Notes under the pieces: generated by a model
Seen by the model: the letters and a program-made list of their open reading frames with translations, nothing else
Told to the model about the DNA's origin: nothing
Databases searched by the model: none
Translations under genes and position numbers: made by a program
Shown: piece by piece, positions 46,570 to 63,737 of the stretch
Position numbering within the stretch: the stretch's first letter is position 1
How the letters are laid out: every line of letters starts with the position of its first letter
Source of the DNA: Bugula neritina
Lineage: Eukaryota > Animalia > Bryozoa
DNA: 64,000 bases
Direction of reading: 5' to 3'
NCBI GenBank assembly: GCA_964035545.1
Contig: OZ037765.1
Span: 7,140,698-7,204,697 of the forward strand

Positions 46570-49500
46570 TTAATTTTCCTTATCACTGCTTATTGCATCG
46601 TCATCTGCACTAGCTGAGGGGTCTTGACTCATACTCTCTCCCTCCTCATCGGAGTCATCCTCCCCATCAAAAATAAAGAGTCGTACTCTTCTGTTAGATA
46701 GCATCTACAACATCAATTTAATTGTTTACCAGTATAAATACAAAAAAAAAAAAACCACACTGTTTTGTCCAATAAAAATAATCTCTACTTCATTGCAGTG
46801 TGTGTTCAGCAGCATAGAGCTGGTGAAAATGTGATGGTTACATTTCAAATTTAAAAAAAACTATTTTCACTTGGTATTGAAGCCTATCTACTCCACGATT
46901 TTCAGTTTAATAAATCATGCATGTGAATAATGAAAAATCAATTGTTCAAATTAGGTATATAATTTTTTACCATTTTGCTACCCAAGTGGAAATTTTCAAA
47001 TAAGCAGTTGATGTTATATGTTCCAAGTATCAGTTGATGCACCTGTTTTATCCTTTTTTATAAGTTTAAAAATTCACACAAGAAATGCATTTTAAATAAT
47101 TCAAATACTTACAACACTGCTGATATCTCGTTTGCCACTTGCACTTATTTGCACAGCATTAAACGCATTCTGTAGCACTTTGATGTAGGATGGACTCACG
47201 TATTTTCCTGCCTCAACAGCTTCACTGAAATAAATATGCAACAGATGCTCAAATAGTGACAAGTTTAATTTTGTTGGCATTGTCTGTATATGCAGGTATA
47301 AGAAGAGTTGATCATAAATATATATTAGCCAATTTGCAAGTGGTTGTTTTATTGGTTTGGAGTTGTTTTCTTTTATTATTGATTACTGGCGAAAGGCCTA
47401 CTTTCAAGTGTATTTTGATAATTAAAATTAATTAATTGTACTTTCTTTAAACAATTTTTGTCAAGAGGTAACCTTTAATCAAATGATATACGAGACAAAG
47501 TGCTAAAAAAGTATTTATAGTTGAAACAGTAGCAGAGATTTCCATACTTGGTTCGTGCCCAGTCCTGTGAAGTTAAACTCTCAAGATTGAGCCTTACAGT
47601 TACAAATGATTTGTAGCCCTCCATCTTCTGCTGAAGGAGCACTACTATTTCCTCATCCTGGTAGTAATCAAAGTCGACTATCCTATGTTGTTGGCATCTA
47701 CAAAAATTGCATTTTAGTTAGATTCACATAGCAAAAATAACTTTTAGTAACAAACATTTCCTTCACAGACATGCAGTGGCTATAAGAAATCTGCCAGAAT
47801 TCATGGAGGCAATGATGACCATGGTTAAAATAGTGATATAGTTGTTCCTTTTTGTAAAATTCTTCACTAAAATGCTAGAGAATCTAGAAGTTAAATTTCT
47901 TGATTCAAAAGGTCAAACTAATAATGGTAAAATGTGTTCTTCAAAACACATCGTTTAACTACTAAATAAAACTGCCCTTGAGTAATAATGCTAAAGTGTA
48001 CCCATAAATGTTTTGTTTACATGCTGAAATGTCTCAACTAACATAAAGCCATGTCAAAAGTAACAGCTCTACAAATAAAAATGGCATTTACATTTTGTTA
48101 TTAGCCAGTCCATGTATTACTGAGGTTTGTACACTACTTTTATAAACTATTAAAATAAAACGCATGTTAGTTTTTCAAATGAATAAGTAATGGGATGCGA
48201 TAACACATTTTTGGAAAATATAATTATTAATTATAATTGACCAGGCAAAATATCTGAGTTGAATAAAATGGCTTGAAAATCATTTTTAAGGTTGTTTGGA
48301 AACTGGAATAAATCAATATTAGAGTTGCGTTCTCACAACTACAAGCTGATTGGCTGAAAAGAAGAGCGTTGTAAAGTAGGAAATATTTGGTGATGATAAA
48401 TAGCTGTATAAAGTTAGCAGTGTCTACTTCAATAAAATGGCTCAGTGGTTACACACGGGAAGGAAAATGGAAAGACTGGTGGTAGTTTTGGTAACTCTTA
48501 TAAGCCTCACTCACACAGTAAGTAACTTTCTAATTTAATATGTACCAGCAAGTATTCATTGGGTTTCAGGTCCAACAGTTGAAGCACTGCTTTAGCATTG
48601 AGTTTATATTTGATGCACCTATCAACAGTTGAAGGATAAATGAAGGCCTATATCCATATTATCTTGTTTCAAGGTTACTAAAATTAGCCATCGAAAAAAT
48701 ACAAATTTATGTGATCTAACTGATTGTTAAATTGTGCGCAGTGGGTCTTGGAAAGAAAAACTTTCATTTTTAAAACTTATATTTGAACTTCTCATTTTAT
48801 AAGCTTATGCTGCTTTTGAAAAATAGACTGTATTTTGAATATCATCTGATTTTTAAAAAAATAATGACATCAAACTTAAAACAGCTAGAACTTAAATATT
48901 TAATAGAATGGAGTATACACCAAACTTTTTCTGTTAAATTTTAAACGACTGAAAGGTCAAGGTAGAAGTAATTAATAGTAAGCAGTAACCAGGAGGTGAT
49001 AAATCAACCCCAGATTTGAGCATCAAACAAGAACCTGATGTTGCACAATATATCAGAGTCACCTTGTTATTCTTCAATTAACCATCTTTTGTGATTGTTG
49101 ATGGCTAGGCGGAGATAATCATGAGATTGAAAATATGGATATAGCAAAAGGTTATTTTATATTTACCAAACCTAAGAAATTCCAATCATGTTTAGGTGAT
49201 CATAAAAATAGCTAACTTTAGTTTCATTGAGGCAGCAAAATTTACACTACATGGATGCCACAGTATGATATATTGCTATTGTTTATGTAACAAAACTAAT
49301 TTTGAATCATCTCCATATAAATATAATTGAACCTGGTAAAATAATGTAACCCTAAATTAAAATCAACAGCTATAAAAAGTGATTATAATTGTAAATAATA
49401 TTAAATTTATTTTTACATCACCCTGACAGCTGTGAATGGACTGAACCTACTCCAGAAGCTATTAGTAATTACATATCATTATTTATATATGTTATTTTCA

Positions 49501-52500
49501 AGCAGTTGGAGATTGAGATATGAAGAAGATAATTAGTATTATTTCTCAGAAATAGCTGCAATTAACACTTTGAATAACAGACTTACAGTGTCATCTACAG
49601 TCAGTATGTCAGAGATAAGCAGTTTATTAGATCAAATGGCACCAGGAGACAGTGCTGCCTTCATGACACTGACAACGGGCACTTCACACTGAAGCTGACT
49701 ACCATAACATAGGATTACAGCTATAGTAACAGATATTTTAATGGCCAGTAAAATAGAATAAAATTCAAGCACTTGCTATAACGTTTCCATGGTGATGTAG
49801 TAGAGATAACATAGTATGGTAAAGGGGCTATTTATTTCAGTAGCATGATTGTCTGCCGAGATTAAAAATTTAAAAATTTCATGAAGACTTTAGATAAATT
49901 TCATAATCAGCTGAGGGTAAATTTTCTTCTGACATGCAGTTGACTAATGTTAGTTGTTTCTCAAAGGATAGAGGCTTTGATAGACAATTCATACCACAGA
50001 ACAGGTTCAGACTGAACAAAGAGTTAAAAAAAGACAAGGATGGTGGGTTGCTGTGGTAATATCCTGAGGTATAAATCCTAAGAACTAATATGACTGCACT
50101 ACACACCAAGCCATCAATAATGTATTGACAGCTATAATAGCCGTGTACATTTGCTAATATACTGGAGCTAAAACTTAATGGCTGGGCTAATAAATTATTA
50201 AAGATTAGAGTTAAAAAGTACATTGCATTCTAAATAAATAACTATTTCCCCTTCCCCCCCAAAAAAAAGCTAGTTATAAAATATTTTATACTTTTACACG
50301 ATTTCATATTGTAAAGCTAAACTTTTTCTTGGTGCAATATGGCGTGGTGGTTGAGTGGGTGAGCTAGTTACTTGCTATACACACAATTTAACAAGATATG
50401 TAATCATTTCAACTACTCAAATATCAAAAACATTCAAACTGCCATTTTATTAGAGACCAAGCAACCAAACAAAGCTTATCTTAGATCTTACTCACTCAAG
50501 TAACTACAATACACAACAAGTGTGGCAATAAAACTCTCAAAAGACAACAATTTGCCTGATGATAAAAGCATTTCTCTCCATGTATGAGTATTATTTATAC
50601 CTTAAGGGTCAATAAAATACTGCCATTTTGCTGATAACATCAATTCCTTGTTCAAGTCATCAGTTAATGGCACCTTCTAGTTACAATATTAAATGTTATT
50701 TAGACTAGAAATCTTATCTGTAAAAACTCTTGGAATATTGTTTGAAATTCAATTTCTATGTTTTAGTTAAAGTTGCCCACATGGAAACAGTTATCAACCA
50801 GCTACCCTGGCTATAAGCACAAAGGACAGGGGAAATATACAAACTTAGAACTGTTTCTCAGACTAGGCAAGGCACCTTTACCAGACGAGGATAAGGAAGA
50901 TACAAGTGCGCTAAGATTATCTTTTGCCCTGAATAAGTTGGGTGGTTCCCACAGACTGGGGACAGATGAGATCCACATTTCCAAGACATTTGACCATGAC
51001 AGTGTGAAGGGCAGAGACGGTCAGCAATACATATACAGAACCATGGCTTTCGGCCCTTTCCTTGCCATGAAATATAAAAGTCCAGAACTCATTAGAACTG
51101 ACCCTCTGGACCCAGATTTACCAAAAAGAACATTGAAAGGAAAGCGTGGTATCGTCAGATTCGTGGCATTTTATAACAAAAACAAGCACGCTGATGCAAG
51201 AATAGCATTGTGGGACTGTGACCATGTATTCGAGGCAAGAAACCTTGGCAAGATGCACCATCTTATTTCAGTGGAATTCTGGGAACTGCCAGGTAAGAAA
51301 TTATAACCGTCTACTAAACAAGAACACATTTCTTGTGGTATTTAATGTATGTATAAATAATGTTGAAACATTTCAACATATAAGTACATAATGATGGCAC
51401 GCCAGGATCAACATATATATAGCTGTGTATACTAAACAAGGAAATCCCATATAAATTATATACTCAGACATTAGATCTGGTGGGAATCTGGCATAGAAAC
51501 AAAACTTGGTTCCCAGTGACCCAGTGAATATGAAGTGCAAAGCATGAATTGAAAATTAGTCATTATAACCAAAGCATAGGAACACTAAAGCCTTTCTTGA
51601 TAATATTTTGACTCACTGGTAATAGAGGTTAGCTTCCTAATATATTGTATAAGAATTGCTCTTCTTACAATTACATCTGCTGCATGGATGCTAAAGAGAT
51701 AGTGTTGAATAATTTATTAGAGCAGGAAAAAGATAAGTCATAATTATAAGTCCCAGAATGCACAACTATATTAGTCATTCACTGTATGTGCAGCACAAGG
51801 TGGTGTATATGTAGCATAAAGCTATATAAATGCAGCATAAAGTAGTATATATCCAGCATGCAGAGCTAGTGTAGACTGTAGAGCAACCTTTCAACTATCC
51901 ACCAGTGATTCTTTGAACAAAGAGATAAATTTAGCTGTGCCTAAAGATGCTATCATTGATAAAATAGTTGGAAAAGGAGCAATGTTTACATAATACTGGG
52001 TGTGTGGGCCTATCAAGTGACATCTGCTGTAATAGTCATGGTTCTGGTAAACACAATAGTAAGTTATACCTACAGATAAGATACCAGCTTGAACACGAAC
52101 AGGTGTTCATCTGCCATGGGGCATAACTCCCACGTCCCTAGCCAACAGGCAGCTGGTGAAAAGTGTGCAGATTGGCAAGTGGCTAGTATTGTAACTAATT
52201 CACTGTTGACTTTACAAAATACAGTTTATAATCTAACAATTATAAGATACATTATTCACTCCCAGTCCAAACATTACATGAAAACTAACTGCTGTTCAAT
52301 GGCCCTTGAAAGTTTTGGAGCACAAAGTAGAGGCAAACATCTTAAGAGCTCTTACAATAGGATATGCCTGATTTGTGAAGGTAGAAATTGGAGAGGTTAA
52401 TGGGATGTAAATATAGTAAAACATTTCTTGGATCATTGTGAGTGTGAAATGGGCAGAGCAGATGGGCTGCCAGAGTTGGTCATGTGCAACGCTAATATTG

Positions 52501-55500
52501 TTTTTACAGTACAATGTGAGACAAAATATCCTTTTCAAGCGTATAATTCATGCACAAACATTTTATGTCACGATATTGCAGGCCTTTGAGTCCACGTGTT
52601 AATATTTCTATGGTAAAAGAAAAGAAGCTTTCATCAAATGTAAATACAAATACTCCGCAGGTCACTAAAATCATAGTTGTTCAAACAAGATGTAAAAAAC
52701 CTTTGATTCCATTAGCAGTAGGAATATTATAATGAAGAGTGAAAGAAAAGAGTTTTAGGATTGCAAACTCACAGATAAATCATGGTTTGAATGCACCTGT
52801 AAAGTGAACAGCTATCCGCTGTGTATGGATGATTATCAGTAGAAACACAGCGTGAGGGATTCGTTATCATCTACTCTAATATACTCTACAATCTAGACTC
52901 TATAATATACAACTCTATATAGCACTTGAGCTCACAATCTGTCATGACTAGCTAGCCTTTATACTGTAATGTTAATTATACATCTTATCATAGCCAGTCT
53001 ACTAAACTCTCTAAGCAAATATACACACTGGTTGAATAATAATCTAACTAAATAGTACAGATGGGTGTGATCGCTTATTTATACTCAACTTGAGTCAAGT
53101 TTTTCAATTTCTATCGTATAGCAACACACATAGCTTTACACCAATTCAAATTATTTCATTTCAGATTCCAGTTGCCCGTCTTGAACAAAGGATGATACTG
53201 AAAGCAAAGGTAGTATATGGATATCAAGGGAGTGGAGTAGAGTCAGATGTATATAGAAACCTGCTGCCTTGTAGCAATGAAAGACAGCACCATTTCAATT
53301 ACATCACTTAATCTCGAACTTTGAATTACGTAAGGGGGGGGGGGGGGATTAAAATGTACATATTATATTTTTTAAATTTTGAAACTAAGTCTGATTTCCT
53401 GACCAAATTATAATTATGATGTTGAATGCATTTATACACTTATATACTCTGTAACTTATCTAGTCTTTATATGTGTAATGAGTTACTTATGTAATCCAAT
53501 GAATAATTATTTTGCCGGTTTTTTTTCAATAAATTCAGATACGATTGGTAATCCAAAGGTGGTTGAAGTATTGTTGTATTACATAACTAAAAAGACAGTC
53601 AATGTCTTCCATTCCGTGCTGTTAGGTGCCCAAATCAGCTTATCTCATCTCTAAGTTGACTGCGTGGACACTGGTTGCACACGTTGCTCACATTGGTGTG
53701 AATTTCAATGTATGGTTGAACTCAGTTGTGATATTTCACAAATTTATGATAGAGAGAGGCTTCATTTCATCTTTTGTGTCACGCAAAGAAGGTTTTATTA
53801 TATTTATGAATTTCAATCATCCACTTACACTACATTCAATAAATAATATAAGTTGACATTCAAATCTTGTCATTGAACAACAATGAGAAGATTTTCTTTG
53901 TGATTGTTGAATTTAATTACATAAACTGTGGTCAAACTCCAAGCTAGGTTATTTCAAAGTACTATTTACTAACTTTGCAGTGGCTCACACATCACTGGTG
54001 ATTGGCTAATCAATTATAAAAAAGAACTTTTGACTGCTGTGATTGGTTGAAAAGAGGCAGGTGGTATTAGGTGGCAGATTATTATAATTTTTGGAGATTA
54101 AGCAACGAAGCTGTGATAACATTTACATTTCAATGGATAGAAATGACAATATTTGAAGAGAAGCTCATCTCTCAGTACACAGCTACAGCTAAGAGAGCAG
54201 CTGCAGTATTTGCTTTTGATGGAGAAAAAACAGAGAAACGTAAATTCTTTGATACGGTCGTTTGTTCTCACCCATTAAAACTGCTACAAGCACTCATGAA
54301 GTGTACTTCAATTTGCTCTCAACAACTGTGAGGCCAGAGTATTGTAGTTAAAACCATAATAACTGATCAAGGAGAGTATGAGTACCACAGAGGTGCCACC
54401 ATCAACACTGTGGCCGTCAACTTCACAGCTACTGTAATTGTTAGCCTTTGTTATATCCCTTAATTACAGCAGAGATATGGAAGACATCAGATGTTTTTTC
54501 AGTATAAGATGCTATCTGGCTACTGTCACCCAGCTCTAGTGTGGCCAAAATCATCTTTGAGAATTTTCCAATAGCCAGAAATGTAATAAAAAGAGATTCT
54601 GCTCCATTAGTCATAGATGCATGGCAAAGCAGTTTATAATTGAAAGAATGTACAAGTAAAAAGATATATAAACCAATTAATAGGGTGGAAATGATTGAAA
54701 ATTAATATTCATGAATGTCATATATAATGAGAAATACTTGCTATTTGCAAGCTTTCACACTGCTCTAACAGTAAGGTAATAATTACTCATCTATATTGTC
54801 AACTAGCAATAACCATATTGGGAGTATTATAATTGGAGAAATTTCTTTTATAGTTACAATCTAGTTCTCGGTATATAATATGCACTTTTTGCTAATTCAA
54901 ATCAAATCCCTTAAAATTTGAAAGGTTAATAATTGCAGTTTGCAAATTCAATATTGTCTTCGATGCTTTCAGTGCCTTCTGGTGCTACCAGTTCTGAGAG
55001 AGGAACTTACAAAACAATTTGTTGACTAGAACAGAGTCAATTTAGGCAAAAACTTGGCTGTTTTTTGGTGTCAACTAGCTAGAAGTAGTTCAACAGCTTA
55101 CTGTCTTGTGCAAAAAAAAATCAATTTTCTTACGAAATATTATTTAAGGAGATATTAGCCATGGCCAGAGAGTAGCCACGCCAGACATTGTGAAATGCCT
55201 GTCCTGTATCCATGTCCAGGTGACGGCTTAGCATTTTTTATAGTATAAAAACATCCTTATTTGTCATTGGAATTTTTATTCTGCTTACCTTATAGTATAG
55301 CATTGCTTTCTTAGAGATCAAATTTGAATATGTTAATAAAAATATGAAAATACTCAAACAAAATTCCTGGAACCACCTTAAAACTGCTAATCCAATAGCA
55401 ACCCTCTTGCCCACTGTATGCTAATCAAAAAAGTTATTAATGTATGCACTTATTGCAGGATTACTTATTAAGTTGAAAGAAGTTCTGGACAAAATTCTTT

Positions 55501-58500
55501 TGTAGAGAATATTCTGTCTTTGTTATAGTACAATTACTGTCTCAGCAATTAGAATGCTTGGTTTTACTATAGTAACACAGACTAGACCTTAATCACTATA
55601 TCTTTCCATAAAAATTTTTCAATTTATATTTCAGTAGACAACGTTTTGGTAAAACTATATACAATTTAGAGCTGAACATTTCACTCCAATATCCTCAATG
55701 TTCAATGCTTTACTCCCAGATATCAAACCTAAATAGTATAATAGTAAAGGTCATTGGGTATATACATATTATATTTTATACTCATTTGCCACTAAGCTAT
55801 AGTCATGTCTTATATGGGTAGCCATGCAGCACTGCGACACATTCTGTATGGTAGGTCTCAAATGATTCTGTATTGTAGGTTAATTTAGCCAAGAATTTAT
55901 TCAGAAAAAAGGGAAGAGCCGCTGTAAGTGACACTGACAGGGCAGTGAGGGGGAAACTTTTCCAATTAGTAGAACTAATATGGTGTCTATTCACTCTGCT
56001 TTGGCACTTGACTGTTTATTTATTCTGGAAGTCATTCTGTTAGAAAAATGTTAGCTAAAAGAGCAGGTGGTACTTAGCAGTGTTTAGAGCAAGATTGGCA
56101 AAAGAATTGGCAATAGTCTGAGAATATCTAGCTGACATAGTCTGACAAGCTTCACTTCACTTGCTGCGACTAGGCAGAAATTTCAGTTACCCATTAATTG
56201 CCAATTTAAAAGAGATTTTAAAAATGGGTAAATATGAATCTAGTTCAAATTTAAATTTATAGTTCAGCAATACATTTGATCTTAAAGGCAACATAAATAA
56301 TGCTTGTTATAATAAACTTCTGGTTAAGATTAATGATCTTGTAAATAGATGGAGCTGTACAATTCTACTAGCAAGGTGTATTAGTATGGCTTACAGCTAT
56401 GACTGCACGACTATGTAGTATAACTGTACAGACTGGACTTACAGCATGATGTATTACACTTTAATTACTGATGAGTGGCGAGTGAGATGGACAGGCTATC
56501 TGTACAGTAATGCTTTACCATTACATATTCAGTCTAACTCATGTTTTAGTGAAGACACCTTTACACTAGTATTATGATTACAGGCTACATGTTATTTCTG
56601 CATTGCAGTTATAATTGTCTCAAAATTATCCTCCCTAACATACCCCCTCTTCTCACATACCCCCTTTCTCATATCCCCTCCCTGACATACCCCCTCACTG
56701 ACATACCCCCCTTCCCACAAAGAAAAACCCCTCTCTCGTCAACACAACTAATAGCTACTCTGTCTCACACCTTAGATCTACCAAAGTCTTAACTAATAGT
56801 GTATACAACGTTCACTTGCTAACTATTTTTAGATTTTCAAATTTTTAAAACATCTTCACTTTGTCTGCTTTCATTAGAAAAACAGCTTTTACAGTTTAAT
56901 TGCCAAAGCATACACCAAATCAACTTTAGTCTCTCTCAGTCTCTTACCAGCATCAATAGAATACAATTGAGATACTCAAACGAGATATGCTTAGAGAGTT
57001 GATGGGCTCTTAGTATTTCAACATGAAATTTACTTTAACAAGTATTCTTAAAATGCACTGCAATTATTATTTAGCCATATAACAACTGGCAGAATTTGTT
57101 ATCTCCACCTGCTTCAAAAAGCAATTGCGGTAAGTTATGTACACATTGCCTCATTGCATCAAGAAGTTAGGAAAGATAACTCCACAAGTTAGAGGGATAA
57201 TTAATAGTCACAGTTTGTTTTGCAGAGTTTTCTGTTCATATATCATATCACAACATATTACGGAGAATGTACTGCTGCTGCTCACCAGATACCGCAGTTA
57301 ATGCAAGAATAGAATGTAAGCTACAAGCTTTATATGGCACTGAGGCTAAGAAACATGAACTTACGGATACAGTTCTTCGTCCTGCCCCAATAGACCAAAT
57401 ATTAGCTCAGTTTTGTATAATTCACTGCAAAAAAACAAATAATTACTGCTCAATTCTAAAACCTTCAAAATTTCAATAAAAAAAATACCTCATTTCAACA
57501 AATTTGTTCAAACTGAGTCATTGTCAGAACATGTGAGAAATTCTACTATCTTAGCACTATGAACCACAGCTTATGTTAGCTGATAACAGAAATGAAAGAA
57601 AGATACCTTATCAACAGTTTGATAAAATAAAAGTAACATATGGATACACAATGCACGAGATAATAAAAGATATATCTAAGATATGATATACTCCGAGACA
57701 CAACGTAATACAAAGTTCACTTTTTGATTCTTATCCTCTAAAAGGAAACAATCAAGTTTTCCGTTTACAATACAGCAGCTAACATCAACAAGCTAGTTGA
57801 CTGTCAAATCTTCAATACCTGCCATGGTTTAGAAGAGCTAGTTTGGTTACAAATAATCGTGATTCGGAGTTGTCTTTCCCGTCTATCAAGTAAATGGAGT
57901 ACATGTTTTGAATCCCATCGTTGTCTTTTCCTGGAAACCTGAAAGACAAGAGAGGAGATTTACCACAGTTAATATAATGCATACGACATCCAGAGATGAG
58001 CTCTCTGTTGCTGGAGGAAATATTATCAATCAGCTTAGCAATTTAAACTTTGGAAGAGAAGGAGCAAAGTAAGCTGAATATACAGAGACTGTGTCATCTA
58101 AATCAACTTTAAAATAATTTTCAAAGTATCTCTCAAAATTAATCGTAAATGCAAAAAATACAACAGCAAAAAATAGGCAATATCATGAACAAGTTACTAA
58201 GACAATAAAGTATGAAAGGCGTTAGAATTAAGTCTTGATTTTGTTAGTCAAATAGTGAACACATGTATGTAAATAACATGACTATGTGCTATATATACAC
58301 ACTTTATACACAATATACACACACTATATACACATTATATACACATTATATACACACTATACACACACTATATACACACTATATACACACTATATACACA
58401 CTATACACACACTATATACACACTATATGTATATAAACTCACTGTCTCAACTTCTGTAACTCACATTTACCGATCAGTTTGTGTGTAGTTTGTATCTCCA

Positions 58501-61500: not shown

Positions 61501-63737
61501 ATGAGCCAGGGCTGTGCCTTTGAAGATGTTACTGTCAAACGCCATGTGCCTTTTCAAGGTATGCATTTAAATATAGATTTAGTTATGACATCAAACCAAA
61601 GACTCGTAAAGTAATAAATTAAACTTAGAAATACTAACCAGTATAGAGCCAATAGGAGAAAGATTTACTAGTATAGAGCCAATAGGAGAAAGACTTACCA
61701 GTATAGAGCCAATAGGAGAAAGACTTCAGATTTTTATTTCCATTAGATAACAGTCTGTATAAAAAAAGGCAACTATGAAACTTGCTTTAAGATAAAGCTA
61801 AACAGTCGAGAGGGACACTATACGCTTTTATTTCATCAAATTTTTTACTCAAATAAATATTTGTTTAGCTTTTAAACAGAAGCTTTAAATGAAAATTTTT
61901 CACGTAAATAAACTTAAAGCTCATAATTCAATATTTGAAAAATAACATCCATTTTAGTTAGGGCCAGATTATTCTGCTACATGAAATACAAATACTGCAT
62001 TTTCAAAATTCAAACTTAATACAAAACAAAACCTTTAACTATATTTGTAAGTTTTATAACATCTCAAAAATAAAATACTGTCTGTATAGACATATAATAT
62101 GTCGTACATATTTTAGTTTATAGATATGCATTTTCAACTGCTCTATTTTATTCAAGGGAGCAGCCGTGGTCTAGGGGATAGAGCGATGGCTTAATAAACA
62201 CGAAGTCATGGGTTTCATTGGTGTTGCTAAAAAGAACATTTAGTCATCCTTTGCCACAATAATGAAACCGTCCTTAGCCCACTTTAAAAAACACTTTCTA
62301 TCAGGGTTTCCCACAGGGACAGCGACTATAAACTCACGCGAGTTTTTGTACATCAAATTCAAATAAAAATAGGTAAAAGCTAAATAAAACGAGCTTTAGT
62401 AGCTGATCAACGAATGCGCCAATTTCATATATTACTACAGTTTACTTGTTCAAGCTATCATATACATTGCACGGCATCTGTATATCATAACTATCAGTCA
62501 TACTAAACCTAGAACTAACACATACCCTTGCATTTCATTTATTTTCAGTCTCAGGCTGGCACACGCATACAAAGCAGACTCCACGCTGTCGGTGTTTAAC
62601 CCTATGACGCCGAAAGTGTCCGTCCATTGAGAAAGGCCGTGCAGGTCATTCAGATGGTAAAATATTGCCTCTACAGCACTGTGGATATAAAAACAAAATA
62701 TCTATCTAAATAGAAGACCATAACATTATCTAAGTTGATAAATGACAGGCATTTTATTGGAAAATTTAATGCTTTGTACATATTTTTTATCAAGTTCAAT
62801 AATACCTCAATTCATCTTACTCTATTATGTAAAGTATAAAAGCTACCCAATAAATATGTAATTCAAGCCTCAATATTATCTTAATACTTTTCAAGTATAG
62901 AACAATATTAATTAATACAACTTTAAAAAAAAGAGAAAGTGGTCTAAACAATCACAACTAATGCATATGCCTGAAATAGGCATCAAATTGTGGCGAAAAT
63001 AAATTGCAGTAATCTAGAAGAAACAAAGTTATGCATTAACAAACAGACCACATTGAGCAGTAAATTTAAATTTTAATAAACGGTGAAACTATGACATCAA
63101 ACTACAACAATACACAAAACAAAACTAGTTAGAATAGAGAGTGGGTGTACCCCTGCATGTTTACGGTTAGTAACTCCTGCATAGTCTTGTAATACGTCTG
63201 CAGAGTAACTCCTAACTTCTTCATACCCCTTTCAGTGATGGTGTCGGTTAGAAAAACCTTCAACTCTTCACTCGGGGTGCCAAAGAGCAGCAGCTCTAGA
63301 AAGTCGTTCAACACTGTTCCTTCCCCTGCAAGCTAATACAACAACACATACTTTTATCATGCTTTATTCATTGCAGCTCATGATAACATAACTATAGTGC
63401 ATATCACATTATAGCGCATATCAAACTATAGCGCATATCACATTATAGCGCATATTACATTATAGCACATATCAAACTATAGCACACATCACACTATATC
63501 ATGCTGCACATTTTATTCAACTAGAATCTAGATATTAAAACATACTAAATATTACAGCACAGCAAAACCTTTCCAAACATTAATAAACTATATACTTGCA
63601 ACTATGCAAGACTCAGAGATTGCTTTTGGCACTAACTCACCTGTTTTTGTGTAGAAAAATGATTGAGTTTGCGGTCTAGCTCCAACAAACCATCTTCCCA
63701 AGCTTCAGTCATCTTTGTAATGCTGGCATCACAATGC
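46570..63737 (-). CDS. ANAPC4: Anaphase-promoting complex subunit 4, 3' part (gene starts beyond the window end)
   Basis: Approximate exons 63641-63737 (MTEAWEDGLLELDRKL), 63151-63332 (DFLELLLFGTPSEEL...GMKKLG), 62526-62679 (FYHLNDLHGLSQW), 61699-61754 (KSFSYWLY), 60821-60921, 60213-60339 (RLERVGQYLKD), 59613-59710, 58443-58519, 57819-57938, 57365-57424, 47548-47697 (DFDYYQDEEIVVLL), 47113-47224 and 46570-46704 (RVRLF...acidic tail). They match recalled human APC4 motifs in order. Confidence 0.93.
48437..53184 (+). CDS. Secreted Tae4-family (T6SS peptidoglycan amidase effector) homolog, dae4-like, catalytic dyad substituted; nested in an ANAPC4 intron
   Basis: Exon 1, 48437-48517 (MAQWLHTGRKMERLVVVLVTLISLTHT, donor GTAAGT), is signal-peptide-like. 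Exon 2, 50767-51292, carries the domain: LPTWKQL...DTSALRLSFALN...SVKGRDGQQYIYR...LKGKRGIVRF...ARIALWDC...VEFWELP. Recalled Tae4 reads RPAF...NACPIRMSYVLN...TVTGSDKKRYMFR...FAGKQGIIIF...GHVTLWNG...ATFWSL. Probable exon 3 is 53165-53184 (DSSCPS*). Total ~208 aa. The domain call is firm; exons 1 and 3 are inferred from splice signals and phase. Confidence 0.82.
58292..58430. repeat. ~11-bp tandem repeat (TATATACACAC)
   Basis: Repeated CTATATACACA units. Confidence 0.9.
59152..59505. mobile_element. MITE-like element related to 4519-4926, with an internal inverted repeat
   Basis: Starts GCATGGTGCCACATTAGATGGATT, the same terminus as the 4519 MITE. Contains a ~55-bp inverted repeat, 59223-59276 versus 59446-59500. 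Confidence 0.65.
61637..61726. repeat. 30-bp x3 tandem repeat overlapping an ANAPC4 exon end and splice donor
   Basis: AC(C/T)AGTATAGAGCCAATAGGAGAAAGA(T/C)TT three times. Confidence 0.95.
62156..62347 (+). mobile_element. tRNA-derived SINE, copy 4
   Basis: GGGAGCAGCCGTGGTCTAGGGGATAGAGCG...CACGAAGTCATGGGTTTC...GTCCTTAGCCC...CACAGGGACAGCGACTATAAACT. Confidence 0.75.
63388..63498. repeat. 17-bp minisatellite
   Basis: CACATTATAGCGCATAT-like units, ~6 copies. Confidence 0.85.

What the first reader, a model, noticed from the sequence alone, without database searches (positions are those of the whole stretch)
50890..51225. The Tae4 homolog has lost both catalytic residues: possible pseudo-enzyme peptidoglycan binder
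Seen in sequence: the nucleophile position (Tae4 NAC/NTC) reads DTS (AGT at 50905-50907). The general-base position (GHVTLW) reads ARIALW (AGA at 51199-51201). The frame is intact and the structural motifs are kept. His->Arg(AGA) needs several base changes, so it is unlikely to be a sequencing slip. The spliced protein has only two Cys (WDC and terminal SCPS), a plausible extracellular disulfide. Inference: selection kept the fold but not amidase activity. It could have been repurposed as a peptidoglycan-recognition or opsonin-like protein, or as a decoy for bacterial Tai4-type immunity proteins. An alternative is a rebuilt Ser-His site using the His four residues upstream (NKHADAR).
Basis: partly seen in the sequence, partly recalled or inferred. 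Interest (0 to 1): 0.85.

Follow-up and report, generated by a model that had tools for sequence, protein, structure and literature searches.

The report
Catalytically dead domesticated Tae4 amidase
A bryozoan gene descended from a bacterial cell-wall-cutting toxin is expressed, spliced and strongly conserved although both catalytic residues are gone. It therefore probably now binds bacterial cell wall rather than cutting it, but binding has not been tested.

Summary
Exon 2 (50767-51292, +) encodes a Tae4-fold domain: Pfam PF14113 scores above its cut-off, and the AF2 model matches EcTae4 at Z 17.6. A profile-profile alignment (probability 99.8%) puts Ser47 (AGT 50905-7) on the catalytic Cys and Arg145 (AGA 51199-201) on the catalytic His.

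The gene is real. Spliced RNA contigs from four studies confirm three exons: a signal-peptide exon, the domain exon, and a short tail ending in a Cys. dN/dS against a sibling lineage is 0.027.

- The Cys is absent (Ser/Thr/Ala) from a whole lophotrochozoan clade: molluscs, annelids, a brachiopod, nemerteans and bryozoans. The clade is marked by an invariant 'WDC' Cys and a conserved phase-1 intron.
- His->Arg occurs only in one sub-clade: both paralogs of this genome, Watersipora and 14 unnamed relatives, plus one nemertean.
- In the core bryozoan sequences the residues next to the old site are also relaxed, while new residues (Arg145, His164/165) are fixed.

A non-catalytic peptidoglycan binder, like RipD or the non-catalytic PGRPs, is the best reading, but binding is untested. 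I rate this a new variant of a known kind, of moderate-to-high interest.

The parts
48437..48517 (+). Exon 1 coding part: 27 codons, start ATG at 48437 (second in-frame ATG at 48467), hydrophobic signal-peptide-like core. Transcript contigs start at or before 48423.
   Evidence: Translation. Spliced contigs of 4 runs end at 48517 and continue at 50767. Orthologs carry comparable N-terminal hydrophobic leaders just before the 'LP.[WF]' start of the domain. No signal-peptide predictor was available.
48518..50766 (+). Intron 1 (2249 nt, GT..AG, phase 0)
   Evidence: Joint 48517->50767 in contigs of runs X2, X4, X18 and X13. It is 88% identical to the sibling-lineage contig L006, against 96% for the exon.
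50767..51292 (+). Exon 2: the whole Tae4-fold domain (175 codons plus the first base of the Asp codon)
   Evidence: PF14113, 32.1 bits. AF2 pLDDT 87.3, pTM 0.86. Foldseek top 11 hits are all Tae4. VIA-align Z 16.6-17.6 for 9 Tae4 entries, next hit Z 4.7.
50905..50907 (+). AGT = Ser47, at the position of the Tae4 nucleophile Cys (N-T-C motif reads D-T-S)
   Evidence: It is the first residue of helix 47-58.
51199..51201 (+). AGA = Arg145, at the position of the Tae4 catalytic His (G-H-V-x-L-W reads A-R-I-A-L-W)
   Evidence: Arg is found in all 18 sampled members of the Arg-bearing sub-clade.
51217..51219 (+). TGT = Cys151 of the clade-specific 'WDC' motif (bacterial Tae4 has Gly here). Candidate disulfide partner of the tail Cys.
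   Evidence: Invariant in the animal clade, while bacterial-type proteins have Gly in 83%. It lies at the end of strand 141-151, at the hairpin turn.
51232..51234 (+). GAG = Glu156, at His+11, the position of the third triad residue (Asp139 of EcTae4)
   Evidence: Position taken from PMC3852654. It is Gln/Glu in the His-keeping clade but E/Q/D/K/N in the bryozoan sequences.
51293..53164 (+). Intron 2 (1872 nt, GT..AG, phase 1, splits the Asp codon)
   Evidence: The joint is seen in contigs of 3 runs. The same intron position is inferred across phyla: spliced models read 'PDSxC', and unspliced gene calls read through as 'PG[KE]..'.
53165..53184 (+). Exon 3 coding part: the last two bases of the Asp codon, then S-S-C-P-S and stop (TGA 53182-84). 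The tail Cys is TGC 53173-75. The 3'UTR runs past 53400.
   Evidence: This matches the C-terminus of database protein P0001.

Best explanation
This is a three-exon nuclear gene, transcribed and spliced, of a bryozoan (most likely of the Bugula neritina complex). It encodes a small, cationic, secreted protein with the fold of the bacterial type VI amidase effector Tae4, so it is a 'domesticated amidase effector' of the dae4 kind.

It cannot carry out the papain-like Cys-His chemistry of Tae4. The nucleophile is Ser, the general base is Arg, the third triad position is variable, and the bacterial disulfide loop that lines the site is absent.

The loss came in steps:
1. The Cys was replaced (Ser/Thr/Ala) in the ancestor of a lophotrochozoan-wide clade. 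That clade also gained an invariant Cys ('WDC'), a conserved tail Cys and a shared phase-1 intron.
2. His was replaced by Arg in the bryozoan lineage and in at least one nemertean.
3. In the core bryozoan sequences, the residues next to the old catalytic centre became free to vary, while Arg145, Ala144, His164/His165, Arg158 and Ser105 became fixed.

Shown: fold, residue equivalences, expression, splicing, purifying selection and the order of losses on the tree.

Inferred: the protein keeps the muropeptide-binding groove and works outside the cell as a non-hydrolytic peptidoglycan or bacterial-surface binder (recognition, agglutination or sequestration). On this reading the Arg-Asp pair (Asp143/Arg145) in the former active site contacts charged groups of the D-Glu/mDAP stem peptide.
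For: - Fold and family.
- Residue equivalence.
- Transcription and splicing in 4 studies.
- Purifying selection: 18 synonymous against 2 non-synonymous differences (dS 0.176, dN 0.0047, ratio 0.027), with intron identity only 88%. Paralog B has ratio 0.106.
- Family-wide loss of Cys: among rows covering at least 78% of the domain, 50 Ser-His, 38 Ala-His, 4 Thr-His and 20 Ser/Thr-Arg. No family-type member has Cys at that column; the one Cys-His row that aligns a Cys at the WDC column, P0062, is a bacterial RHS toxin (all-row tally).
- Named members in molluscs, annelids, Lingula, two nemerteans, Watersipora and Bugula.
- All Arg-bearers fall in one clade, sister to the Lingula sequence.
- Site-wise shift of constraint.
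- Conserved 'PDSxC' tail.
- pI 9.5, net charge +8.5.
- No Cys/His-bearing copy in the same genome.
- Precedents: M. tuberculosis RipD is an NlpC/P60 domain with Ala-Ser-Glu in place of the triad. It still binds peptidoglycan without cleaving it (PMC12067865). Non-catalytic PGRPs act as peptidoglycan sensors (PMC3041801, PMC8124813).
- Mutating the Cys alone abolishes activity in Ssp1/Ssp2 (C50A, PMC3852654) and in nvDae4 (C63A, PMC8713801).
Against: - No binding, localisation or induction data exist for this protein or any member of its clade.
- The coordinates of the AF2 model could not be read, so the state of the groove, the Ser47-Arg145 geometry and the C151 to tail-Cys distance were not measured.
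- The relaxation of groove-lining positions in bryozoans (G104, F154, Q156, D159, W160) could equally mean that the old ligand site was abandoned.
- The His-keeping relatives conserve His and Gln/Glu without a nucleophile. This is unexplained and warns that the family's chemistry or ligand is not understood.
- Support for the Arg clade is modest (SH-aLRT 80), and the careful tree searches did not finish.
Confidence: 0.55

Rival explanations
1. The protein has a new function unrelated to peptidoglycan, with the Tae4 fold reused as a scaffold for another ligand or protein partner (for example adhesion, a matrix role, a larval function or symbiont signalling).
For: Positions homologous to groove-lining residues of bacterial Tae4 are relaxed in bryozoans, while a different set (His164, His165, Arg158, Ser105) is newly fixed. 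This pattern fits a change of ligand. Nothing ties the protein to immunity.
Against: The motifs shared with bacterial Tae4 around the site remain invariant: T46, R50, S52, N56, G128 and L148-W149. Both known precedents for dead peptidoglycan hydrolase folds, RipD and the PGRPs, kept peptidoglycan binding. The protein is secreted and cationic.
Confidence: 0.3
2. It is still a hydrolase and uses a non-canonical mechanism, for example a Ser/Thr47 nucleophile activated by another base, or a water activated by Arg/His.
For: Ser or Thr is always present at position 47 in the Arg-bearing clade. Conserved polar residues (His62, His164/165, Asp143) exist. Strong purifying selection is compatible with an enzyme.
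Against: Position 47 is Ala in 38 relatives that share the rest of the site. Thr is not a nucleophile in this fold. Arg is a poor general base. The third triad position is variable. A Cys-to-Ala change alone kills Ssp1/2 and nvDae4.
Confidence: 0.1
3. It is a decaying pseudogene, an assembly or sequencing artefact, or bacterial contamination.
For: The catalytic residues are missing.
Against: - The frame is open, with two spliceosomal introns and a signal-peptide exon.
- Spliced transcripts occur in four studies.
- dN/dS is 0.027.
- The same substitutions are found in a second paralog and in other named bryozoans.
- The window has 33% GC and animal flanking genes.
- No prokaryotic genome among 185,579 species carries the family's motifs.
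Confidence: 0.02
4. It is a decoy that soaks up bacterial Tai4-type immunity proteins.
For: C50A mutants of Ssp1/2 still bind their immunity proteins, so a dead effector can bind immunity proteins in principle.
Against: Immunity proteins are periplasmic and protected by the outer membrane. Half of the residues that Ssp1 uses at its immunity interface lie around the catalytic site and the disulfide loop, both of which are changed or missing here. The genome holds no active Dae4 whose action a decoy could assist.
Confidence: 0.02

Closest known systems
Bacterial Tae4 / Ssp1-Ssp2 (T6SS amidase effector family 4, Pfam PF14113; PDB 4HFL, 4HFF, 4J30, 4BI3, 6IJF)
   Same: Same fold over the whole domain (Z 17.6, rmsd 2.7 A over 151 residues). 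Shared motifs: the N-terminal 'LP.F..L..YP', 'T.A.R.S..LN', 'GK.GI' and 'LW...W'.
   Different: Cys is replaced by Ser and His by Arg. The Asp at His+11 is not kept. The C-x3-C disulfide loop that lines the site is absent, and 'WDG' has become 'WDC'. The gene has a eukaryotic structure with a signal peptide and introns. No immunity gene is expected.
Dae4 of animals, e.g. Nematostella nvDae4 (PMC8713801), and the dae concept of Chou et al. 2015 (not held in the library)
   Same: A Tae4 gene domesticated in an animal genome, secreted, and maintained by purifying selection.
   Different: nvDae4 keeps the catalytic Cys63, cleaves peptidoglycan and kills B. subtilis. The same paper notes that the second Nematostella homolog lacks the Cys, and the authors set it aside. 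The protein here lacks both Cys and His and belongs to a large clade with no Cys at all. That clade has not been described in any paper I could find.
RipD (Rv1566c) of Mycobacterium tuberculosis
   Same: An NlpC/P60-superfamily domain with both Cys and His replaced. It binds peptidoglycan but does not cleave it (PMC12067865).
   Different: A bacterial protein from a different NlpC/P60 family. Its replacements are Ala/Ser, not Ser/Arg. It has a C-terminal pentapeptide-repeat tail. This is a resemblance of principle, not close homology.
Non-catalytic PGRPs (e.g. Drosophila PGRP-SA, -LC, -LE)
   Same: Animal immune proteins derived from a peptidoglycan amidase fold. They lost a catalytic residue and act as peptidoglycan sensors, while catalytic paralogs persist (PMC3041801, PMC8124813).
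   Different: An unrelated fold (T7-lysozyme-type zinc amidase). This is a functional analogy only, and it is untested here.
Tick Dae2 (10.1101/2020.04.10.036376)
   Same: A domesticated T6SS amidase effector used in animal immunity.
   Different: It comes from the Tae2 family and is catalytically active and bacteriolytic.

Membership tests
Tae4 / PF14113 (sequence family) | Scores above the Pfam gathering threshold over most of the profile | tested here: met
   32.1 bits against a cut-off of 27, profile positions 3-125 of 125. hhalign to 30 bacterial-type members gives probability 99.8%.
Tae4 / PF14113 (sequence family) | Bilobal NlpC/P60-like Tae4 fold | tested here: met
   AF2 pLDDT 87.3. 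The top 11 Foldseek hits are all Tae4, E 4e-7 to 9e-6. Z is 16.6-17.6 for 9 entries, with the next fold at Z 4.7.
Tae4 as an enzyme (gamma-D-Glu-mDAP DL-endopeptidase) | Catalytic Cys in the N-[TA]-C motif at the start of the helix | tested here: not met
   Ser47 (AGT 50905-7) occupies the column. All 57 bacterial-type hits with His have Cys there.
Tae4 as an enzyme (gamma-D-Glu-mDAP DL-endopeptidase) | Catalytic His in G-H-x-x-L-W | tested here: not met
   Arg145 (AGA 51199-201), with Gly-1 also changed to Ala.
Tae4 as an enzyme (gamma-D-Glu-mDAP DL-endopeptidase) | Acidic third residue at His+11, and the C-x3-C disulfide loop lining the site (EcTae4 Asp139, Cys137-Cys141) | tested here: not met
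   Glu156 here, but the column is E/Q/D/K/N among the bryozoan sequences. There is no Cys at +9 or +13.
Tae4 as an enzyme (gamma-D-Glu-mDAP DL-endopeptidase) | Cleaves peptidoglycan stem peptides | not testable with these tools
   Needs recombinant protein and a sacculus/HPLC assay.
Domesticated amidase effector (dae4-type gene of an animal) | Encoded in the animal nuclear genome with eukaryotic gene features, and expressed | tested here: met
   Two GT..AG introns and a leader exon, confirmed by spliced contigs from four studies. The window has 33% GC, and ANAPC4 exons lie nearby.
Domesticated amidase effector (dae4-type gene of an animal) | Maintained by purifying selection | tested here: met
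   dN/dS 0.027; paralog B 0.106.
Non-catalytic peptidoglycan-binding NlpC/P60 domain (RipD-like, by function) | Catalytic Cys and His both replaced while the fold is kept | tested here: met
Non-catalytic peptidoglycan-binding NlpC/P60 domain (RipD-like, by function) | Binds peptidoglycan | not testable with these tools
   No binding data exist, and the model coordinates were not readable for a look at the groove.

The most novel reading that the evidence does not exclude
A bacterial T6SS toxin captured before the lophotrochozoan radiation lost its nucleophile early. It has since been kept for hundreds of millions of years, in molluscs, annelids, brachiopods, nemerteans and bryozoans, as a secreted, disulfide-braced, non-hydrolytic peptidoglycan sensor. 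That would be a second, independent invention of a PGRP-like receptor class, this time from an interbacterial weapon. In bryozoans, and separately in a nemertean, the last catalytic residue was converted to an Arg that reads a carboxylate of the stem peptide.
Probability: 0.3. Interest if true: 0.8.

Novelty: new variant of a known kind. Interest (0 to 1): 0.6.

Why it matters
Domesticated amidase effectors are the textbook case of animals borrowing bacterial weapons, and every characterised example (tick Dae2, Nematostella nvDae4) is an active lytic enzyme. This gene shows that one lineage of these genes has been preserved under strong selection with no catalytic nucleophile across at least five phyla, and with neither catalytic residue in bryozoans.

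If the protein binds peptidoglycan, this repeats the enzyme-to-receptor transition known from PGRPs, but starting from a horizontally acquired toxin. It would also add a candidate class of pattern-recognition molecules for Lophotrochozoa, whose immune receptors are poorly known. The stepwise series (Cys lost, then His lost, then neighbouring residues relaxed) is a natural experiment for testing what keeps a dead enzyme fold under selection. In Bugula, which houses a vertically transmitted bacterial symbiont, a non-lytic cell-wall binder could also matter for managing the symbiont.

Tried and rejected
- Single-sequence phmmer against the PDB was only marginal (E about 0.9). The profile search reached E 6e-4. 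The fold search was decisive.
- Cys151 as a relocated nucleophile is rejected. It lies six residues beyond the His column, at the hairpin turn, and co-occurs with a conserved tail Cys.
- Pseudogene or artefact is rejected.
- Chou et al. 2015 (Nature 518:98; PMC4713192) is not held in the library. What that paper says about dae4 catalytic residues is therefore known only through PMC8713801.
- Literature searches for Cys-less Tae4/Dae4 homologs in molluscs or bryozoans found nothing relevant.
- The 'careful' maximum-likelihood searches did not finish in the time allowed, with either 139 or 58 rows. The trees quoted are the quick ones, with SH-aLRT support only.
- The search for related loci with alignment A2 had no usable conserved stretch. 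With A1 it found no prokaryotic relative. That scan is pattern-based, so this is weak negative evidence.
ANAPC4-domain exons lie at window 62528-63326 on the minus strand. Exons on the other side of the gene were not sought.
Full report
1. WHAT IS IN THE SEQUENCE

The flagged stretch lies inside an open exon, window 50767-51292 on the + strand. It is bounded by an AG acceptor at 50765-6 and a GTAAGA donor at 51293. Codons 45-47 read D-T-S, with AGT at 50905-7. Codons 144-149 read A-R-I-A-L-W, with AGA at 51199-201.

The 175-residue translation matches Pfam PF14113 (Tae4) above the curated threshold: 32.1 bits against 27, covering profile positions 3-125 of 125.

2. GENE MODEL AND EXPRESSION

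- Exon 1: an ATG at 48437 opens a 27-codon exon with a hydrophobic leader. It ends at a GTAAGT donor at 48518.
- Exon 3: begins at 53165 behind an AG. It completes an Asp codon and adds S-S-C-P-S and a stop.

Logan contigs from four runs, belonging to four different studies of the same nominal organism, were laid on 48300-53400. They show:
- the joint 48517->50767 (GT..AG, 2249 nt skipped) in all four runs;
- the joint 51292->53165 (GT..AG, 1872 nt skipped) in three runs;
- essentially no contig cover over the introns.

The gene is therefore transcribed and spliced as modelled. The window has 33% GC, and ANAPC4-domain exons lie 9 kb downstream on the other strand.

Exon 2 was used by reference, and the database protein P0001 stood in for exon 2 plus exon 3. 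In one search the 17 coding bases of exon 3 were appended to exon 2 inside a script. This was done only to keep the codon frame for a dN/dS count against a natural contig that has them contiguous.

3. ARE SER47 AND ARG145 REALLY AT THE CATALYTIC POSITIONS?

Several lines of evidence agree:
- HMMER alignments to the PDB Tae4 chains put Arg145 under the His of '..ARGHVTLW'.
- 134 hits of an exhaustive profile search were aligned to the family profile. About 60 bacterial-type sequences read N-[TA]-C-A-[IL]-R-[LM]-S and [TD]-G-H-x-x-L-W-[DN]-G. The window protein reads D-T-S-A-L-R-L-S and D-A-R-I-A-L-W-D-C, without gaps.
- A profile-profile comparison of 25 animal sequences with 30 bacterial-type sequences gives probability 99.8%, E 2.7e-28 over 165 columns, with the same two equivalences.
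- The AlphaFold2 model (pLDDT 87.3, pTM 0.86) places Ser47 as the first residue of helix 47-58 and Arg145 in the middle of strand 141-151. This is the standard geometry of papain/NlpC-P60 enzymes.
- The model's only convincing structural neighbours are Tae4 structures. Foldseek gives E 4e-7 to 9e-6 for the top 11 hits, with the next hit at 0.29. VIA-align gives Z 16.6-17.6 and rmsd 2.7-3.0 A over about 150 residues for nine entries, with the next fold at Z 4.7.

In Ssp1, a Tae4-family enzyme:
- Cys50 and His133 form the catalytic dyad.
- The oxyanion hole is made by backbone amides.
- An Asp completes the triad. It sits at His+11 in EcTae4.
- A C-x3-C disulfide loop lines the site.
- C50A abolishes toxicity (PMC3852654).

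In nvDae4, C63A abolishes lysis and killing (PMC8713801). In the window protein the His+11 position is Glu156, and there is no C-x3-C loop.

4. NOT A SLIP AND NOT DECAY

The RNA contigs differ from the window at 20 positions in exon 2, but not in either codon. Eighteen of those 20 differences are at third codon positions.

- Window copy against contig L006, which comes from a sibling lineage (SRR4020085): 18 synonymous and 2 non-synonymous differences, dS 0.176, dN 0.0047, dN/dS 0.027. Intron 1 is only 88% identical.
- Second paralog: it lies at G000:C2:1918430-1918945 on the minus strand (51% identity). It also reads D-T-S and D-A-R-I-A-L-W. Against the published Bugula neritina assembly its dN/dS is 0.106.

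No copy with Cys and His was found in this genome, either by a protein search or by a PF14113 search.

5. FAMILY HISTORY

Sequence searches recover a large clade of animal proteins. Three features define it:
- an invariant 'L-W-D-C', where bacterial Tae4 has 'L-W-D/N-G';
- a conserved tail;
- no Cys at the nucleophile column.

Among rows covering at least 78% of the domain, the states at the two catalytic columns are Ser-His 50, Ala-His 38, Thr-His 4 and Ser/Thr-Arg 20 (one search gives the tally over all aligned rows). One further row, P0062, reads Cys-His and aligns a Cys at the WDC column. It is a bacterial RHS-repeat toxin and groups with the bacterial-type outgroup.

Named members:
- bivalves, gastropods, a cephalopod and a chiton;
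- the annelids Paralvinella, Owenia and Capitella;
- the brachiopod Lingula;
- the nemerteans Lineus and Tubulanus;
- the bryozoans Watersipora and Bugula.

Every properly spliced member continues after the last strand with 'P-D-S-x-C'. Gene calls that ran into the intron read 'P-G-[KE]...' instead. So the phase-1 intron and the tail Cys are shared across phyla. This points to one ancient acquisition with vertical descent, and it makes a Cys151 to tail-Cys disulfide plausible.

A pattern scan of one genome from each of 185,579 prokaryotic species found no relative carrying the clade's motifs. A metagenomic contig from the most GC-rich sub-group has the low coding density of a eukaryote.

6. 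THE HIS->ARG STEP

In two quick maximum-likelihood trees, built with the trait columns removed, all Arg-bearing sequences fall in one clade (SH-aLRT 80). That clade is sister to the Lingula protein (92 in the 58-row tree; unresolved in the 139-row tree). Within it:
- An 18-row sub-clade (support 91) holds both paralogs of this genome, Bugula neritina P0014, Watersipora and 14 unnamed sequences. All of them have Arg.
- A second group (97-98) holds Tubulanus (Arg), an unnamed sequence P0017 (Arg), and P0036, whose 90%-identity cluster includes a Lineus longissimus protein (His).

The minimum is two changes. Either there was one replacement and one reversal, or there were independent replacements in bryozoans and in a nemertean.

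A column-by-column comparison gave the following (its printed numbers run 3-4 below the true residue numbers):
- Two columns switched between the His and Arg groups: Gly144->Ala and His145->Arg.
- Several columns are conserved in the His group, and partly in bacteria, but relaxed in the Arg group: Gly104, Phe154, Asp159 and Trp160. Gln156 at His+11 is likewise variable in the bryozoan sequences, as read from the alignment tables.
- Asp159/Trp160 align with the bacterial 'Y-F' that follows the disulfide loop. In Ssp1 this corresponds to Tyr151 at the active-site/immunity interface.
- Other columns are newly fixed: Asp45, Ser105, Arg158, His164, His165 and Ser168.
- The Arg-bearers outside the core bryozoan sequences (Tubulanus P0037 and the unnamed P0017, P0020 and P0028) still keep the 'F-[YH]-Q-x-R-[DN]-[WYL]' stretch. 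So the order is most likely Cys loss, then His->Arg, then relaxation of the neighbouring positions.

- His141 (four residues before Arg145) is Leu in Watersipora. It is Lys, Arg, Met or Ser in other Arg-bearers, including this genome's second paralog. A rebuilt Ser-His pair is not supported.
- Position 47 is Ser or Thr in the Arg clade, and Ala in 38 relatives that share everything else. That pattern suits a helix N-cap rather than a nucleophile.
- Cys151 is not a relocated nucleophile. It sits at the hairpin turn, six residues along the strand from the His column.
- The Tai4-decoy idea has no support.

8. MOST LIKELY FUNCTION

Shown: a secreted, cationic (pI 9.5, +8.5) Tae4-fold protein without the catalytic dyad, strongly constrained and expressed.

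Inferred: it binds peptidoglycan or the bacterial surface without cutting it. The basis for the inference is:
- The motifs around the site that are shared with bacterial Tae4 are retained (T46, R50, S52, N56, G128, L148-W149).
- RipD is a precedent: an NlpC/P60 domain with Ala-Ser-Glu in place of the triad that still binds peptidoglycan (PMC12067865).
- The non-catalytic PGRPs are a second precedent (PMC3041801, PMC8124813).

My probabilities are about 0.55 for this reading, 0.3 for a new ligand unrelated to peptidoglycan, 0.1 for a non-canonical hydrolase, and a few per cent for the remaining alternatives.

9. NOVELTY

Margolis et al. noted in passing that one of the two Nematostella tae4 homologs lacks the catalytic Cys, and they set it aside (PMC8713801). 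I found no description of the following in the searchable literature:
- a phylum-spanning clade of Tae4 homologs with no catalytic Cys;
- its conserved disulfide and intron;
- the His->Arg sub-clade.

Chou et al. 2015 could not be read. I therefore class this as a new variant of a known kind, the domesticated amidase effector turned pseudo-enzyme. Interest is about 0.6, because the evolutionary case is strong but the function is untested.

Noticed in passing
L006:1-6835 (Logan contig of SRR4020085) against window 48488-57182: This sibling-lineage contig keeps intron 1 and about 4 kb of downstream sequence, at about 90% identity. It lacks intron 2 exactly, joining 51292 to 53162/5. Either this is a DNA allele with precise intron loss, or it is a partly spliced transcript. 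The study behind it (PMC5041132) made both shotgun DNA and polyA-depleted RNA libraries.
   Followed up: partly
G000:C2:1918430-1918945 (-) = L002:1402-2019 (-): This is a second paralog in the same genome (51% identity), and it also reads D-T-S and D-A-R-I-A-L-W. It is the ortholog of Bugula neritina EB796_019845, with dN/dS 0.106. Non-coding flanks are only about 87-88% identical to the published B. neritina assembly, so the window genome is probably a different member of that species complex.
   Followed up: partly
Family-wide; in the window, the exon 2 / intron 2 boundary at 51292/51293: The phase-1 intron that splits the Asp codon of the 'P-D-S-x-C' tail sits at the same place in molluscs, annelids and bryozoans. 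Many database proteins of this family are gene calls that read through it (tails 'P-G-K/E...') and so lack the conserved last Cys.
   Followed up: partly
Proteins P0036/P0212 (Lineus longissimus) and P0037 (Tubulanus polymorphus): Within nemerteans one species keeps His (A-D-A-H-V) and another has Arg (A-D-A-R-V) in the same local motif. This suggests either repeated His->Arg replacement or a reversal.
   Followed up: partly
Proteins P0055, P0057, P0059, P0064 and P0056, P0066, P0083, P0103 (ENA contigs up to 230 kb): These are other odd Tae4-like groups. One has Asp at the Cys column and Ser at the His column. Another keeps the Cys but has Ser or Asp at the His column, with an extra Cys just before it. 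Their organisms are unknown, and their placement on the tree involves long branches and is unreliable.
   Followed up: no
window 62528-63326 (-): Two exons here match the ANAPC4 domain (PF12896 positions 68-176). I did not look for ANAPC4 exons on the other side of the gene, so the nesting is unverified.
   Followed up: partly
L002:2301-2720 (-): A 139-codon open frame made of tandem 'L-P-L-H-Y-L' repeats lies about 300 bp upstream of the paralog's main exon. It is probably a microsatellite-like repeat and not a gene.
   Followed up: no
L003:6617-8603 (+), also L004 and L005: In metagenomic contigs of the GC-richer 'G-G-A-A-A-V-R-L-S-W' sub-group, the Tae4-like gene is the third of three small same-strand genes (119, 141 and 200 aa). 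The arrangement is the same in three samples, and the two neighbours have no Pfam match.
   Followed up: no
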